IMG/VR virus record: IMGVR_UViG_3300032334_002567
Span: 1-64,000 of that record
Reading direction: 5' to 3' (one strand)
Length of the DNA stretch: 64,000 nucleotides
In this document: piece by piece, positions 3,117-37,660 of the stretch
Numbering within the stretch: the first letter of the stretch is position 1
Layout of the letters: each line of letters begins with the position of its first letter
Program-made: the position numbers and the translations under genes
The notes under the pieces: generated by a model
The model's input: only the letters and a program-made list of their open reading frames with translations
What the model was told of the DNA's origin: nothing
The model's database searches: none

Positions 3117-3655
3117 TTGTCAATCTCCTTTCTAATTTCTGTGAGTAACTGTGAAGCATATCGTGCATCTCCAAGTAATTTATTAGAAAATCGTGTGTCA
3201 GTCAAGGGGACTACATATAATAAATTTTCTTTCACAACATCAGGAGTGTCATGAGGCTCATATTGATCTTCTGGCAATTCGACTTCTGCTATTGCCATAT
3301 AAATATGCTCTTTATAATCTCTAAAGAAATCAATTTCCCAAGTATTTTCAAATGAATTAATTATATAACGGGTTTTTTCTAAACGGTTAAGAGCTATATT
3401 CCAAAGATCATCAAAATCTCGCTTATCTAACTTCTTTTCTACTTCTATAGCTCTACCACCTGTTGTAGCTTTTAAAGTAAAATAGTACTCAGTCTTTTGA
3501 TTGCTTAGTTTTACAGACTTACGAACACGTACCGTTATACCTCTTGTGGCTATAAGATAACCTTGGGATATGTCATACTGTGAGGATGAATTCTTTTTAA
3601 CTTCCGACTCACAGAGAGAATCTATGACATATTTTCTTTCATTTTCTGTAGGAAT
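3113..3655 (-). CDS. CYTH / triphosphate tunnel metalloenzyme (CyaB-like), 180 aa, ATT start; the ORF track shows only the last 61 aa
   Basis: (M)PTENERKY (ExExK), ISQGYL, VRVR, FTLK, EVE, EKTRY, WEIDFF, IAEVEL, DTRFSNKLL; AGGAGA 7 nt upstream of ATT. Confidence 0.88.
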   Translation of the reverse strand: MPTENERKYVIDSLCESEVKKNSSSQYDISQGYLIATRGITVRVRKSVKLSNQKTEYYFTLKATTGGRAIEVEKKLDKRDFDDLWNIALNRLEKTRYIINSFENTWEIDFFRDYKEHIYMAIAEVELPEDQYEPHDTPDVVKENLLYVVPLTDTRFSNKLLGDARYASQLLTEIRKEIDK

Positions 3656-3666
3656 GGATAAATCTC

Positions 3667-35118: not shown

Positions 35119-35517
35119 ATGAAACAAGAATGGTATGAAATAATAGATCTTTTTGGATTTACTTCAAGTTTAAGAGAAATGATAATAGAAGATTTCTACT
35201 CTGAGGAAGAGAAGTTTAAAAAAAATAAATTTGGTGGGCTATTTAAAGAACAAAAAGAACAAATAGAAAAAAGACTATCACTACAAGAGGCAGAAAACAT
35301 AGTTTCTTCTTTTGTAAAAACTAAAAAAGATAACCTTGGTAATCAATTCTATACTATTTCAAAAAAATCTCTGGCCAAAGCCCTTAAAGATTTAAATACT
35401 AGAATAACAAGTAATATATTAAAAGATTTAGTTTCCAAGGGTGTTATAGATACCGCTTATGATAATGAAAAAAATGATTTTATATTTTGGATTAAAGACC
35501 AAGATAATTTGGAATAA
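35119..35517 (+). CDS. Hypothetical protein
   Basis: 132 aa; winged-helix-like C-terminus. Confidence 0.6.
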   Translation: MKQEWYEIIDLFGFTSSLREMIIEDFYSEEEKFKKNKFGGLFKEQKEQIEKRLSLQEAENIVSSFVKTKKDNLGNQFYTISKKSLAKALKDLNTRITSNILKDLVSKGVIDTAYDNEKNDFIFWIKDQDNLE

Positions 35518-36589
35518 AAGATTCTTCTGCGGCCCAAATTAAACTATTTACAGCTCTAGAAGCGGCTGTATACGCCCAGCGGGTGTGGTCCCACTTGTTA
35601 CATCTTTGCTCAAAAACAATTAAAGAGCCAAATTGATCACCTTGTGCTTTATGACATGTTATACAATATGCATAGTCAAAAGGTTCAGATTCACTAGAGA
35701 AAGAAAATTTGTTAGTCTCTTGACCAAACTGGTCTGGATCGTATCTAATCTGTTCAAATTGCTGTCCATCGGAAATAAAATCAAAATGTTCATTTTTTCT
35801 AATTTTTGTAACAACACCCTGCATACCGTTGAATAAACCTTTTAGTCTATTGTTTTTAAGGCATATAATCTTCTCTCCAACTGCGACATATGTGTAGTGT
35901 ATATTCTTTTCTTTTCTAGCTCTTTCATTTACTATAACTCTAGTTTTGTTATAAGCACAAATTACTTGATCGACTAGAGCTATGTGCTTGTCTTCAACAG
36001 CATTATGTTTAACAACCTGTACCTTATGTGATCCTTTAAATAAAGTTGCCATCTTTCCTTGTCTTAGATGTTCTGCGAAGTGGGCTATTTCCCCTGCATT
36101 TCTGTGAACTGTTTCTAATTTATATTTGGGGTCTTTCATCAAGTTAAATTCTGTGCCGATTGGTTCTAATTGGCCGTGATCTCCAATATAGATGATTGGA
36201 AGACCAAAAGAACAAAGATCGTTATGAATTTCTTTACTAACCATTGATGCTTCATCAACAATAAACCCATCAATTATTCCATCAAAATAATCTCTCTCAA
36301 CTAATTGCCAAAAAGTTTCATCTTTTTCATCTTTAAAGGGCCTATAGATTGAACTATGAATAGTACAGGCCTTAGAAATACCCTTTTTTCTTAAAACATT
36401 TGCTGCTTTTCCCGTGTAGGCACAAGGGAGAAAATTTAGGTTCTTTTTTTCTAATATATTAAGAAGAACACGTATAAGAGTGGATTTACCAGTGCCTGCA
36501 TAACCGCCTAAAGTAGTAATTAGTTCGTTACTTATATCTTTAACAATATATCTAATAATATTTTTTTGTTCTTCGGTAAGCTGGGGCAT
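35492..36589 (-). CDS. SF1B helicase, Dda/RecD-like
   Basis: GYAGTGKST, TGKAA, DEASMV, GDHGQL, YCITCHKAQG, YTAASRA. Confidence 0.92.
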   Translation of the reverse strand: MPQLTEEQKNIIRYIVKDISNELITTLGGYAGTGKSTLIRVLLNILEKKNLNFLPCAYTGKAANVLRKKGISKACTIHSSIYRPFKDEKDETFWQLVERDYFDGIIDGFIVDEASMVSKEIHNDLCSFGLPIIYIGDHGQLEPIGTEFNLMKDPKYKLETVHRNAGEIAHFAEHLRQGKMATLFKGSHKVQVVKHNAVEDKHIALVDQVICAYNKTRVIVNERARKEKNIHYTYVAVGEKIICLKNNRLKGLFNGMQGVVTKIRKNEHFDFISDGQQFEQIRYDPDQFGQETNKFSFSSESEPFDYAYCITCHKAQGDQFGSLIVFEQRCNKWDHTRWAYTAASRAVNSLIWAAEESFIPNYLGL

Positions 36590-36609
36590 TTGCAGGCTCT
36601 GACTAGAGG

Positions 36610-36981
36610 TTATTGATTACGTTGCCTAGTTTGAACATAAAAAACATAAGATTTTTTCAGATTTCCAGCTTCAACCTGACTTGGCGATTGAGTTTCTCTA
36701 TATGAGACGACTAACTTCGTACTTTCTGTTTCATAAGCCAATATACTTTTTAATTTGCCTAAAACCGATGCTACAAATTCTGGTCTTCCTGTAATTCTGA
36801 TGCCGTCTTCGCCGTATGTTGAACCTTTGTGATCATAGCTTATCGGTGCCATTTGTATAGGGGAATCAATCCTTAGAGTTTTCCAAAAGTCAATAATTTG
36901 ATCTTTAGTCGCTCTCCATTCTGATTTTTTTCCCAATTCTTTTTGGGATTCTCTATCACTAATCCAATTTTTAAATTCCAT
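36610..36981 (-). CDS. Hypothetical protein with capsid-targeting-like N-terminus
   Basis: MEFKNWISDRES; CTAAATA 4 nt upstream of ATG. Confidence 0.65.
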   Translation of the reverse strand: MEFKNWISDRESQKELGKKSEWRATKDQIIDFWKTLRIDSPIQMAPISYDHKGSTYGEDGIRITGRPEFVASVLGKLKSILAYETESTKLVVSYRETQSPSQVEAGNLKKSYVFYVQTRQRNQ

Positions 36982-37001
36982 ACGATATTTAGTGTAAAAA
37001 C

Positions 37002-37036
37002 AAAAAAAATATAGAGTGGGTTTCCCCACTCTATAT
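37002..37036 (-). terminator. Intrinsic terminator
   Basis: ATATAGAGTGGG-GAAA-CCCACTCTATAT followed by a T run. Confidence 0.85.
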
Positions 37037-37286
37037 AACTATTCTTATCTTATGTGCATTCAAGGAAGTACGATAAAAACAGTAAAAAGGAACCTTTTGG
37101 AACTTTGCAATTTACTGTGGTTCGTATATATCCTGCCTATTTTTTTAGGTTTTTTCATTTTAAATTCAGCCAAACAACTAAGCTACCACGTTTGGTGGGT
37201 CGCCTCTATGCAATCCATTACATTAGATTGTTGTTTTTCCTCAAGAGTCCTTCTCTTGTTCTTTCAGAGTCTTCATTTCTTTTTCT
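37002..37286 (-). ncRNA. Candidate structured non-coding RNA, family unknown
   Basis: Late-promoter motif CTAAATA (37291-37297) at the 5' end, terminator at the 3' end, no substantial ORF on this strand, several nested stems. Confidence 0.45.
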
Positions 37287-37351
37287 ACTATATTTAGTAA
37301 AATGAAATTTAAATTGAACAAATATTTGGTGAAAAACGACTAAATATGAAT

Positions 37352-37660
37352 ATGATAACTTTTAAAGGGTTTTTAGAATCCAAAGTAATAATAGAAGCAG
37401 ACGCACCACCACCCGCTGGTGGGCCTCCAACGCCTCCCAGTGGTGGACCTGCCGCAGGAGGAGCCGGTGGCATATCTTCGCCTGCTTCATTGCCTGGTGG
37501 GCCTCCAATGCCACCTCCTGCTATGGGTGGAGGTATGGGAGGTGGTCCTGCTATGGGTGGGCCTCCAACAGGAGATGCATCAAGTCAAAATAAATCTATG
37601 AAATTAAAAGCTTATAACGTTTGGGACGTAATAGAAAAATTAATTACCAAAGATAGCTGA
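37352..37660 (+). CDS. Pro/Gly-rich protein with capsid-targeting-like N-terminus
   Basis: MITFKGFLESKVIIEA then PPPAGG repeats; CTAAATA 5 nt upstream. Confidence 0.65.
   Translation: MITFKGFLESKVIIEADAPPPAGGPPTPPSGGPAAGGAGGISSPASLPGGPPMPPPAMGGGMGGGPAMGGPPTGDASSQNKSMKLKAYNVWDVIEKLITKDS

What the first reader, a model, noticed from the sequence alone, without database searches (positions are those of the whole stretch)
37002..37297. Candidate novel phage ncRNA with its own promoter and terminator
Seen: the largest intergenic gap in the window. The minus strand has CTAAATA (37291-37297), then ~250 nt with only short ORFs, then a GAAA-tetraloop terminator. The next gene has its own promoter, so this looks like an independent transcription unit. 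Stems: 37242-47/37253-58; 37172-77/37231-36 enclosing hairpins 37211-15/37226-30 and 37186-89/37195-98; and a long interrupted hairpin 37063-66/37131-34, 37069-73/37122-26, 37079-86/37111-18. I could not match it to tmRNA, RNase P, SRP or a hammerhead core.
Basis: partly seen in the sequence, partly recalled or inferred. Interest (0 to 1): 0.75.

Follow-up and report, generated by a model that had tools for sequence, protein, structure and literature searches.

The report
New structured small RNA in huge phages
The gap holds a real, previously undescribed ~285-base structured RNA gene, shared by a clade of huge freshwater phages, whose two always-conserved hairpin loops look like docking sites for the RNA-binding regulator CsrA, which this phage itself encodes twice.

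Summary
Window 37001-37285 (minus strand) lies in a 364-nt gap between divergent genes. It has a conserved -10-like box, no conserved ORF and a strong GAAA-loop terminator. Rfam 15, ARAGORN and blastn against GenBank phages find nothing.

The element recurs at the same place in 13 sequences, about 11 lineages, of related huge-phage contigs. A covariance model built from ten of them found three more at the predicted spot (85-88 bits). The 5' domain is supported by covariation: 91% of cells paired, 14 of 22 pairs with double-sided changes, score 0.57 against 0.23 shuffled and 0.09-0.13 slid. G-U pairs place the RNA on the minus strand. Every lineage ends in its own terminator, while the downstream gene differs.

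Two hairpin loops carry an invariant A-N-G-G-A, the CsrA/RsmE recognition motif. The 381-kb phage encodes two CsrA homologues. Their closest cellular relatives found are from Planctomycetota.

My best reading is an independently transcribed trans-acting RNA that binds one CsrA dimer. That it is a structured RNA family is well supported (about 0.9). CsrA binding is inferred (about 0.3). Expression is untested, since no RNA runs were listed. It is not a CsrB/RsmZ-type multi-site sponge.

The parts
37290..37297 (-). -10-like promoter box CTAAATAT.
   Evidence: A box TAnAtAt sits at the same distance upstream of the purine-rich 5' end in all 13 family members. There is no clear -35. The word is not enriched genome-wide.
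37001..37285 (-). Predicted RNA of about 285 nt, from the inferred 5' end (GAAAAAG...) to the end of the terminator U-run.
   Evidence: The ends are inferred from the promoter box and the terminator. Fold z = -3.5. Single copy in the 381-kb genome. Expression not tested.
37163..37268 (-). Conserved 5' domain, the covariance-model match.
   Evidence: R2 gives 76.6 bits, E 1.6e-10. Covariation is shown.
37242..37258 (-). HP1: stem 37253-58/37242-47, loop AAGGA at 37248-52.
   Evidence: The loop is A-N-G-G-A in all 13 sequences. The stem changes GAGA/UCUC to AAAA/UUUU in L095 and L112.
37230..37236 (-). P2, 5' strand (AAACAAC). This long-range helix encloses HP2 and HP3.
   Evidence: Helix 2: 8 pairs, 6 with double-sided changes, 98% of cells paired.
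37172..37178 (-). P2, 3' strand (GUUGUUU).
   Evidence: The A-to-G change at 37229 in L006 keeps a pair, A-U becoming G-U.
37205..37227 (-). P2a (37225-27/37205-07) plus HP2 (37219-23/37208-12), with hexaloop AUGGAU at 37213-18.
   Evidence: Helices 3 and 4: 6 of 7 pairs have double-sided changes, 98-100% paired. The loop is A-N-G-G-A-N in all 13, closed by C-G, U-G or A-U.
37186..37198 (-). HP3: CCAC-CAAAC-GUGG, flanked by the conserved AUCCC-like and GGUA segments.
   Evidence: C-G at columns 84/96 and the GGU triplet are invariant, and the A that follows it nearly so. The second pair is weak.
37136..37149 (-). H4 hairpin: CCUA-A6-UAGG.
   Evidence: A hairpin after AAAAAG is present in most lineages. 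Its outer stem is GUC/GAC in some and GGUU/AACU or GGUU/AACC in others, and its inner stem is GCC/GGC. The L006 indel and substitution fall in its loop.
37063..37134 (-). Long interrupted 3' hairpin: 37131-34/37063-66, 37122-26/37069-73, 37111-18/37079-86.
   Evidence: Present in the sequence. All L006 changes here lie in internal loops. The architecture of this region varies between lineage groups.
37001..37036 (-). Intrinsic terminator: 12-bp stem, GAAA loop, U8.
   Evidence: Every lineage has a terminator of its own sequence at this position.
36986..36993 (-). Second CTAAATAT box, 4 nt before the ATG (36981) of the 123-aa gene, with no Shine-Dalgarno sequence.
   Evidence: L086, L095 and L112 have CATATATAT at the same place. 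Whether it is a promoter for a leaderless mRNA is untested.
37299..37345 (.). Conserved divergent control region shared with the Pro/Gly-rich gene. It includes ACTAAATAT at 37339-47 on the plus strand.
   Evidence: 100% identical between the window and L006. The block TAGTATTTTTCACCAATATTT is conserved across lineages.

Best explanation
Window 37001-37285 (minus strand) is the gene of a roughly 285-nt structured small RNA. It belongs to an RNA family that is not in Rfam and that occurs in a clade of huge freshwater phages, probably of Planctomycetota.

The RNA is read from its own -10-like box, divergently from the Pro/Gly-rich gene, and ends at a strong intrinsic terminator. Its conserved 5' domain folds into a hairpin (HP1) followed by a junction in which a long-range helix (P2) encloses two more hairpins (HP2 and HP3). 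HP1 and HP2 each display an invariant A-N-G-G-A in the loop.

Proposed mechanism (inferred): the two loops, about 35 nt apart, are bound by the two RNA-binding faces of one CsrA-family dimer. That dimer could be the host's CsrA or one of the phage's two CsrA homologues. The RNA would then act in trans as a high-affinity decoy or antagonist that sets how much free CsrA is available during infection.

Shown here: conservation, structure, strand, terminator, absence of coding, and presence of phage CsrA genes.
Inferred: transcription, the exact ends, and CsrA binding with its consequences.
For: - Family and structure. The element sits at the same place in 13 sequences, about 11 lineages. Model R2, built from 10 sequences, found 3 new members (L112, L113, L114) at the predicted place with 85-88 bits and E about 1e-13, and nothing in about 75 other related loci.
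- Covariation. 91-93.5% of cells are paired against 75% in shuffles. 14-16 of 22 pairs have double-sided changes. The score is 0.57-0.62 against 0.23-0.25, with 0 of 500 shuffles reaching it, and slid controls give 0.08-0.13.
- Strand. 26 G-U cells fix the minus strand.
- Non-coding. No ORF is conserved, and there are frameshifts between close relatives.
- Independent unit. A terminator is present in every lineage while the downstream gene differs. Promoters are embedded in the terminator in glycosyltransferase lineages.
- CsrA lead. Exactly two A.GGA motifs sit at fixed loop positions in all 13. The HP2 hexaloop ANGGAN is closed by C-G, U-G or A-U, as in the RsmE/CsrA consensus A/U-C-A-N-G-G-A-N-G-U/A (my own knowledge: Schubert et al. 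2007; Dubey et al. 2005).
- Phage CsrA genes. The phage genome has two PF02599 CsrA genes, at 87 and 61 bits, both above the 27-bit cut-off. CsrA1 aligns over 56 residues with E. coli CsrA 1y00, including the VHR(E/S)E motif.
- Host. The closest cellular homologues of CsrA1 found in the genome scan are from Planctomycetota at 58-77% identity, so the likely host phylum has CsrA.
- Literature. Phage CsrA genes are known and correlate with hosts that have CsrA (PMC8450108).
Against: - No expression data; no RNA run was listed.
- Only two GGA sites are conserved, and the total GGA count is not above chance: 3-5 seen against 3-5 expected. It is therefore not a multi-site sponge. One dimer per RNA would need high RNA levels to titrate CsrA.
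- The rest of the conserved fold (P2, HP3, AUCCC, GGUA, H4) has no role in the CsrA model, which suggests further or other functions.
- Co-occurrence of the RNA with phage CsrA could not be tested. Only G000 is long enough. G001 (26% complete) has the RNA but no CsrA in the part held. G005 has CsrA but no RNA.
- The complex prediction was not run for RNA.
- In the window, L086, L095 and L112 the next gene has no clear promoter of its own, so some read-through (a leader role) is possible.
- Low divergence from L006 cannot be read as purifying selection, because the neighbouring Pro/Gly gene is equally little diverged at third codon positions.
Confidence: 0.4

Rival explanations
1. It is a real structured trans-acting RNA, but with another partner or role. 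Candidates are an Hfq-dependent base-pairing sRNA, since it has A-rich ARN-like tracts and a terminator U-tail; a decoy against a host defence system; or an RNA scaffold for a phage protein. In this reading the GGA loops serve tertiary contacts or another protein.
For: The conserved fold goes well beyond the two GGA hairpins: P2, HP3, AUCCC/GGUA and H4. Purine-rich linkers such as AAAGAAAAG and AAAAAG are conserved. The RNA sits in a variable accessory slot. GGA is not enriched overall.
Against: No target or partner could be named. A GGA-UCC pseudoknot with the AUCCC segment shows no covariation: the base after GGA varies between U, A and C while the partner A is fixed. The match of both loops to ANGGA, together with phage CsrA genes, would then be coincidence.
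Confidence: 0.3
2. It is a cis-acting leader or attenuator. Transcription from the RNA promoter reads through the terminator under some condition, possibly with CsrA or a phage antiterminator, to express the downstream genes: the 123-aa protein and the Dda-like helicase.
For: The terminator ends only 0-45 nt before the next start codon in all lineages. In the window, L086, L095 and L112 no sigma-70-like promoter for the next gene was found, and that gene has no Shine-Dalgarno sequence. All genes downstream are on the same strand.
Against: The gene that follows differs between lineages: the 123-aa protein, an HD-domain protein or a glycosyltransferase. Glycosyltransferase lineages carry a good promoter inside the terminator hairpin, TTGAAC-17-TATAAT in L010 and TTGAAT-17-TAGAAT in L002. 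The conserved domain lies 120-150 nt from the terminator, and no conserved antiterminator pairing was seen. The terminators are strong, with 12-17 bp stems and U5-U8 tails.
Confidence: 0.2
3. The gap encodes one or more small proteins, such as MKKPKKIGR... (32-37 aa) or MKTLKEQEKDS (11 aa), and the conservation reflects coding.
For: Two adjacent substitutions against L006 in the 11-codon ORF are both synonymous: ACT to ACC and CTG to TTG. ORFs of 49-59 aa overlap the element in L002, L010 and L089.
Against: A 2-nt indel in L006 frameshifts the 32-aa ORF. The L010 and L089 ORFs differ by a frameshift in the A-run. The window, L007 and L086 have stops in those frames. The substitution pattern is that of paired RNA, with compensatory changes and G-U pairs. 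The 11-codon ORF is absent elsewhere; group A has only (A/G)UG-AAA-UAA.
Confidence: 0.03
4. It acts at the DNA level, as an origin of replication or a transcript-primed origin near the replication genes, or it is a decaying gene remnant.
For: It lies next to the Dda-like helicase, SbcCD and ribonucleotide reductase genes. The cumulative GC-skew minimum of the 381-kb record falls at 30-35 kb. The slot holds other genes in relatives.
Against: The skew minimum is shallow (-0.10), and skew follows gene orientation here. G-U pairs and strand-specific covariation point to an RNA, not a DNA, constraint. No iterons or tandem repeats were found. There is no similarity to the HD or glycosyltransferase genes.
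Confidence: 0.05

Closest known systems
Csr/Rsm protein-binding sRNAs (CsrB, CsrC, RsmX/Y/Z, McaS)
   Same: Small non-coding RNA with its own promoter and a Rho-independent terminator. It presents A-N-G-G-A in the loops of short hairpins, the motif CsrA/RsmE dimers recognise. It occurs in a genome that encodes CsrA.
   Different: Only two conserved GGA loops, against 4-22 in those RNAs, and no overall GGA enrichment. No Rfam match to any Csr/Rsm family. No GacA/UvrY box. It has an extra conserved junction and 3' domain. It is phage-encoded. Binding is untested.
CsrA-regulated mRNA leaders with two sites bridged by one dimer (for example glgC, hag, hcnA)
   Same: Two GGA sites a few tens of nucleotides apart. 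The hexaloop ACGGAU or ACGGAA closed by C-G resembles the hcnA site.
   Different: Neither site overlaps a Shine-Dalgarno sequence or a start codon. A strong terminator follows, and the downstream gene is not conserved.
Other phage-encoded stable or structured RNAs (T4 RNA C and D, phi29 pRNA, and the phage-associated GOLLD and ROOL)
   Same: Conserved, structured, non-coding and phage-borne, with function not obvious from sequence.
   Different: No sequence or structure match; the Rfam models for these gave nothing. It differs in size from GOLLD and ROOL, which are over 500 nt. It is not next to tRNA genes; none is in the window.
Phage-encoded CsrA/RsmA proteins (PMC8450108, PMC7366521)
   Same: This phage has two such genes. 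The literature proposes that they manipulate host post-transcriptional control, including repression of CRISPR-Cas.
   Different: My literature searches found no report of a phage-encoded RNA partner or antagonist of CsrA.

Membership tests
Csr/Rsm sponge sRNAs (CsrB, CsrC, RsmX/Y/Z) | Many GGA motifs (about 4-22), most in hairpin loops or single strands, clearly above chance. | tested here: not met
   There are 2-5 GGA per RNA against 3-5 expected. Exactly two A.GGA are conserved.
Csr/Rsm sponge sRNAs (CsrB, CsrC, RsmX/Y/Z) | Match to the Rfam covariance models of these families. | tested here: not met
   No hit at the gathering threshold or at E up to 10 in the window, nor at E up to 1 in 7 relatives.
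Csr/Rsm sponge sRNAs (CsrB, CsrC, RsmX/Y/Z) | GGA presented as A-N-G-G-A in the loop of a short hairpin, the high-affinity CsrA/RsmE site. | tested here: met
   The HP1 and HP2 loops are invariant A-N-G-G-A in 13 of 13 sequences while their stems covary.
Csr/Rsm sponge sRNAs (CsrB, CsrC, RsmX/Y/Z) | Direct binding and sequestration of CsrA. | not testable with these tools
   Complex prediction does not fold RNA partners. EMSA or ITC is needed.
Csr/Rsm sponge sRNAs (CsrB, CsrC, RsmX/Y/Z) | GacA/UvrY upstream box TGTAAGN6CTTACA (gammaproteobacterial members). | tested here: not met
   The best matches are 6-9 of 12, at no fixed position. The likely host is not a gammaproteobacterium, so this test carries little weight.
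Independent sRNA gene (promoter plus intrinsic terminator, non-coding) | Intrinsic terminator at the 3' end, conserved in position. | tested here: met
   Window 37009-37036 plus U8. Every lineage has its own terminator.
Independent sRNA gene (promoter plus intrinsic terminator, non-coding) | Own promoter. | tested here: inconclusive
   A conserved TAnAtAt box lies upstream in all lineages, but there is no clear -35, the consensus scan reports no site there, and no transcription start data exist.
Independent sRNA gene (promoter plus intrinsic terminator, non-coding) | No conserved reading frame. | tested here: met
Independent sRNA gene (promoter plus intrinsic terminator, non-coding) | Transcript detected. 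| not testable with these tools
   No RNA run was listed.
Riboswitch or cis-regulatory leader | Conserved association with one downstream gene family, and an expression platform coupled to the sensor. | tested here: not met
   The downstream gene is the 123-aa protein, an HD-domain protein or a glycosyltransferase, depending on lineage. The conserved domain is 120-150 nt from the terminator. Promoters are embedded in the terminators of glycosyltransferase lineages.
tRNA, tmRNA and other Rfam families | Detection by ARAGORN or Infernal. | tested here: not met
   The weak L20_leader hits (25 bits against a 58.7 cut-off) rest on the terminator alone.

The most novel reading that the evidence does not exclude
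This is the first phage-encoded RNA partner of CsrA. It would be a compact, two-site, structurally scaffolded decoy carried by huge phages that also encode their own CsrA proteins. Together these would give the phage a complete, self-contained Csr-type post-transcriptional switch, protein plus antagonist RNA, with which it takes over or times host and phage translation in Planctomycetota. No Csr antagonist RNA is known in that phylum.
Probability: 0.25. Interest if true: 0.8.

Novelty: new variant of a known kind. Interest (0 to 1): 0.62.

Why it matters
Structured RNAs of huge phages are almost unexplored. This one is a well-supported new family, with covariation across about 11 lineages and no Rfam match, and it has a concrete, testable hypothesis attached.

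Phage-borne CsrA genes have been reported and proposed to rewire host regulation and repress CRISPR-Cas (PMC8450108). My literature searches found no report of an RNA that would control or exploit CsrA from the phage side. If the RNA binds CsrA, it shows that phages carry both halves of the Csr circuit. It would also offer a minimal, structurally defined two-site CsrA binder.

If it does not bind CsrA, it is still a conserved ~285-nt RNA of unknown function in an accessory slot of huge-phage genomes, and worth an experiment.

Tried and rejected
- Rfam at gathering and E-value thresholds, on the window and on 7 relatives, gave nothing meaningful. The L20_leader and SpF39 hits are terminator-driven.
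- ARAGORN found no tRNA or tmRNA.
- blastn of the region against 50,697 GenBank phages gave no match.
- An exact 23-mer from the RNA was not found in IMG/VR.
- The 123-aa protein and the helicase as single-protein queries in IMG/VR found no relatives.
- nhmmer with the first alignment found only the loci already known.
- MAFFT plus RNAalifold on all lineages misaligned P2 and missed it. I solved this by building a covariance model from two easily aligned members.
- The first pairwise alignment with L002 on the wrong strand looked unrelated. The element there is on the other strand.
- CTAAATA as a general phage promoter word is rejected; it is under-represented genome-wide.
- A pseudoknot between the GGA loops and the AUCCC segment is rejected, as it shows no covariation.
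- No GacA box.
- Both RNA-seq run searches listed none.
- Complex prediction of the CsrA1 dimer with the RNA was not folded and gives no evidence either way.
- Model R2 found nothing in 5 + 151 Planctomycetota genomes or in the complete 532-kb relative G005 (with R1), and no second copy in G000.
- Purifying selection inferred from window versus L006 is rejected as weak, because of a mosaic boundary.
- The Atlas search gave no function for the 123-aa neighbour.
- The origin-of-replication reading has only a shallow GC-skew minimum behind it.

Full report
**What is there**

The window is the first 64 kb of a 381-kb IMG/VR virus record, 36.5% G+C and estimated 79% complete. The finding lies in a 364-nt gap (36982-37345) between two divergent genes. 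On the minus strand is a 123-aa ORF of unknown function (36610-36981), followed by a Dda-like helicase. On the plus strand is a Pro/Gly-rich 104-aa ORF (37346-37660), followed by SbcD, SbcC and a ribonucleotide reductase.

On the minus strand the gap holds three things. There is a CTAAATAT box at 37297-37290. About 285 nt follow with only 26- and 37-aa ORFs. A 12-bp GAAA-loop hairpin with a run of eight U ends the stretch at 37036-37001.

The stretch folds better than shuffles: z = -3.8 and -3.5, with no shuffle as good. The plus strand also folds well, z = -5.4. Rfam 15 gives no hit at the gathering threshold and only noise at E up to 10. ARAGORN finds nothing, and blastn against GenBank phages finds nothing.

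**Relatives**

I fetched related loci through three neighbouring proteins:
- SbcD, from IMG/VR.
- The 123-aa protein, which has 217 homologues.
- The conserved C-terminus of the Pro/Gly-rich protein, from JGI metagenomes.

A near-identical strain (L005/L006) has the same gap. More distant relatives, with SbcD 71-74% identical, keep a gap of about 320-390 nt next to the Pro/Gly-rich gene. This holds even where an extra gene has been inserted between the gap and the 123-aa gene: an HD-domain protein in L007/L009, and a glycosyltransferase starting MKISFC in L002, L010, L089, L094, L102, L113 and L114.

These gaps align in their 5' part. More distant lineages lack the element. In L003, with SbcD 51% identical, the two genes abut.

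**Structure and covariation**

MAFFT misaligned the long-range helix. I therefore built a covariance model from two easily aligned members (A10, R1). It found the element in nine lineages, always on the strand divergent from the Pro/Gly-rich gene.

A second model built from those ten sequences (R2) then found three new members, L112, L113 and L114. They were at the predicted place with 85-88 bits, E about 1e-13. R2 found nothing in about 75 other related loci.

| Measure on the 13-sequence alignment | Observed | Shuffled | Partner slid 1-3 columns |
|---|---|---|---|
| Cells paired | 91% | 75% | 39-60% |
| Pairs with changes on both sides | 14 of 22 | 7.6 | 2-5 |
| Covariation score | 0.57 | 0.23 (0 of 500 reach it) | 0.09-0.13 |

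The ten-sequence alignment gives similar values. The alignment was fitted to the model, which inflates pairing somewhat, but the contrast with the slid controls and the independent recovery of three members argue for a real structure.

The helices, in window coordinates, are:
- HP1: 37253-58 with 37242-47.
- P2, the long-range helix: 37230-36 with 37172-78. It has 8 pairs, 6 of them compensatory.
- P2a plus HP2: 37225-27 with 37205-07, and 37219-23 with 37208-12.
- HP3: 37195-98 with 37186-89.

Twenty-six G-U cells would be A-C mismatches on the other strand, so the RNA is on the minus strand.

**The 3' part**

After the 5' domain come a short hairpin (H4) and a longer, lineage-variable 3' domain. 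In many lineages H4 has an outer stem GUC/GAC, or GGUU/AACU or AACC, and an inner stem GCC/GGC. In every lineage an intrinsic terminator of unrelated sequence follows.

Between the window and L006, all nine substitutions and the 2-nt indel inside the RNA fall in predicted loops or linkers, or keep a pair (A-U to G-U at 37229). I do not use the low divergence of the RNA (3.2%) as evidence of selection. The adjacent Pro/Gly gene is also little diverged at third codon positions (4.8%, against 18-23% in the helicase and 123-aa genes), which suggests a recombination boundary.

**Not coding**

The 32-aa ORF MKKPKKIGR... is frameshifted in L006. ORFs of 49-59 aa that overlap the element in L002, L010 and L089 are not in a common frame. 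The window, L007 and L086 have stops in those frames. The two synonymous changes in an 11-codon ORF are adjacent bases and may be a single event. That ORF does not exist in other lineages.

**Independent unit or leader?**

A TAnAtAt box sits at a fixed distance upstream of a purine-rich 5' end in all members. CTAAATA as such is not a general promoter word of this genome, with 76 copies against 141 expected.

The terminator lies 0-45 nt before the next start codon. In the glycosyltransferase lineages a good sigma-70-like promoter is embedded in the terminator hairpin: TTGAAC-17-TATAAT in L010, and TTGAAT-17-TAGAAT in L002. There the next gene clearly has its own promoter. In the window, L086, L095 and L112 the 123-aa gene is preceded only by a TAAATAT or TATATAT box 3-5 nt from the ATG, with no Shine-Dalgarno sequence. 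About 20 genes of this genome share that arrangement, which may mean leaderless mRNAs. Some read-through cannot be excluded.

The downstream gene varies, and the conserved domain is 120-150 nt from the terminator. I therefore rank a leader or riboswitch reading below an independent RNA.

**How it may work**

The most telling conserved feature is that HP1 and HP2 both present A-N-G-G-A in the loop in all 13 sequences while their stems change. HP2 is a hexaloop A-N-G-G-A-N closed by C-G, U-G or A-U. An example is C-ACGGAA-G in L010. That is the form of the high-affinity CsrA/RsmE site, consensus A/U-C-A-N-G-G-A-N-G-U/A (my own knowledge of Schubert et al. 2007 and Dubey et al. 2005, not checked with a tool). 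The two loops are about 33-38 nt apart, within the range that one CsrA dimer can bridge (my own knowledge: Mercante et al. 2009).

Prompted by this, I searched the phage genome for CsrA and found two homologues, both above Pfam's cut-off. One is at 182789-182947 on the plus strand, 63 aa, 87 bits. The other is at 189925-190086 on the minus strand, 58 aa, 61 bits. The first aligns over 56 residues with E. coli CsrA (1y00), including the VHR(E/S)E motif. The second is more divergent.

The closest cellular homologues of CsrA1 found in the genome scan are from Planctomycetota, at 58-77% identity. A related contig also encodes a DUF1559-type protein (N_methyl and SBP_bac_10 domains); that type is typical of that phylum (my own knowledge). 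The host is therefore probably a planctomycete that has CsrA. A complete 532-kb relative also encodes a CsrA.

Phage-borne CsrA genes are documented and have been proposed to manipulate host regulation, including CRISPR-Cas (PMC8450108, PMC7366521). My literature searches found no phage-encoded RNA partner of CsrA.

**Limits of the CsrA reading**

- There are only two conserved sites, and no overall GGA enrichment: 3-5 seen against 3-5 expected. The RNA is not a CsrB/RsmZ-type sponge, and it fails that membership test. It would be a one-dimer, high-affinity binder.
- The conserved junction, HP3, the AUCCC and GGUA segments and H4 are unexplained.
- Co-occurrence with CsrA could not be tested, because almost all RNA-bearing contigs are short.
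- The complex predictor does not handle RNA.
- No RNA-seq run holds the sequence.
- The RNA was not found in 156 Planctomycetota genomes, so it does not look like a captured host sRNA.

**Verdict**

That it is a genuine structured RNA family I put at about 0.9. That it acts in trans rather than as a leader I put at about 0.7, given that it is real. That it works by binding CsrA I put at about 0.3. It is a new RNA family. If the CsrA link holds, it is a new, phage-borne variant of the Csr/Rsm type of regulatory RNA.

Noticed in passing
G000 (own genome) 182789-182947 (+) and 189925-190086 (-), outside the window; loci L092 and L093: The phage carries two CsrA-family genes, of 63 and 58 aa. The leader of the second contains AUGGAC and AGGAAGGGA just upstream of its start codon, so it may regulate itself. 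An SprT-like HEMIH protein overlaps the end of the first.
   Followed up: partly
Related loci L007, L009, L010, L089, L094, L102, L113, L114 and L002, between the RNA terminator and the 123-aa gene: This position is a hot spot for gene insertion. Different lineages hold an HD-domain gene (192 aa), a family-2 glycosyltransferase (245-246 aa, starting MKISFC) or nothing.
   Followed up: partly
L010:1708-1750; L002:371-399 (minus strand); also L089 and L102: In glycosyltransferase lineages the RNA's terminator hairpin contains a near-consensus sigma-70 promoter, with the -35 in the 5' arm and the -10 in the loop. The U-tract runs straight into the ATG. This makes a very compact terminator-promoter overlap.
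   Followed up: partly
window 36986-36993 and 37339-37347; about 20 further genes of G000: Genes with a TAWATA box no more than 9 nt before the ATG and no Shine-Dalgarno sequence, including both genes that flank the RNA. They are candidates for leaderless mRNAs. Most other genes have AGGA or GGAG upstream.
   Followed up: partly
G000 306.5-319.4 kb, outside the window: The motif CTAAATAAATTGTACCCTAAAAG recurs at least six times between genes. It may be a module-specific promoter or regulatory site.
   Followed up: no
window 35492-37660 compared with L006: Third-codon divergence is 18-23% in the helicase and 123-aa genes but 4.8% in the Pro/Gly-rich gene. The 77 nt of control region are identical. 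This points to a mosaic or recombination boundary near 36982.
   Followed up: partly
window 37346-37660 and homologues: The Pro/Gly-rich protein has a conserved N-terminus (..F..FLE.KLLLEAD) and C-terminus (LKLKAYNVWDVLEKILK) joined by a low-complexity P/G linker. It has no Pfam or PHROG match and is found next to SbcD far beyond the RNA-bearing clade.
   Followed up: partly
window 3299-3666: A second ORF-poor stretch, about as long as the one studied. It lies between a 61-aa ORF and the end of a 141-aa ORF, and the only long ORF in it overlaps the latter.
   Followed up: no
G000 30-35 kb: The cumulative GC skew of the 381-kb record reaches its shallow minimum within a few kb of the RNA and the replication genes.
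   Followed up: partly
window 37241-37276 (minus strand); L086, L007 and L095 5' leaders: An 11-codon ORF (MKTLKEQEKDS) runs through HP1 in the window. Relatives instead have a mini-ORF (A/G)UG-AAA-UAA at the corresponding place. Its significance is unknown.
   Followed up: partly
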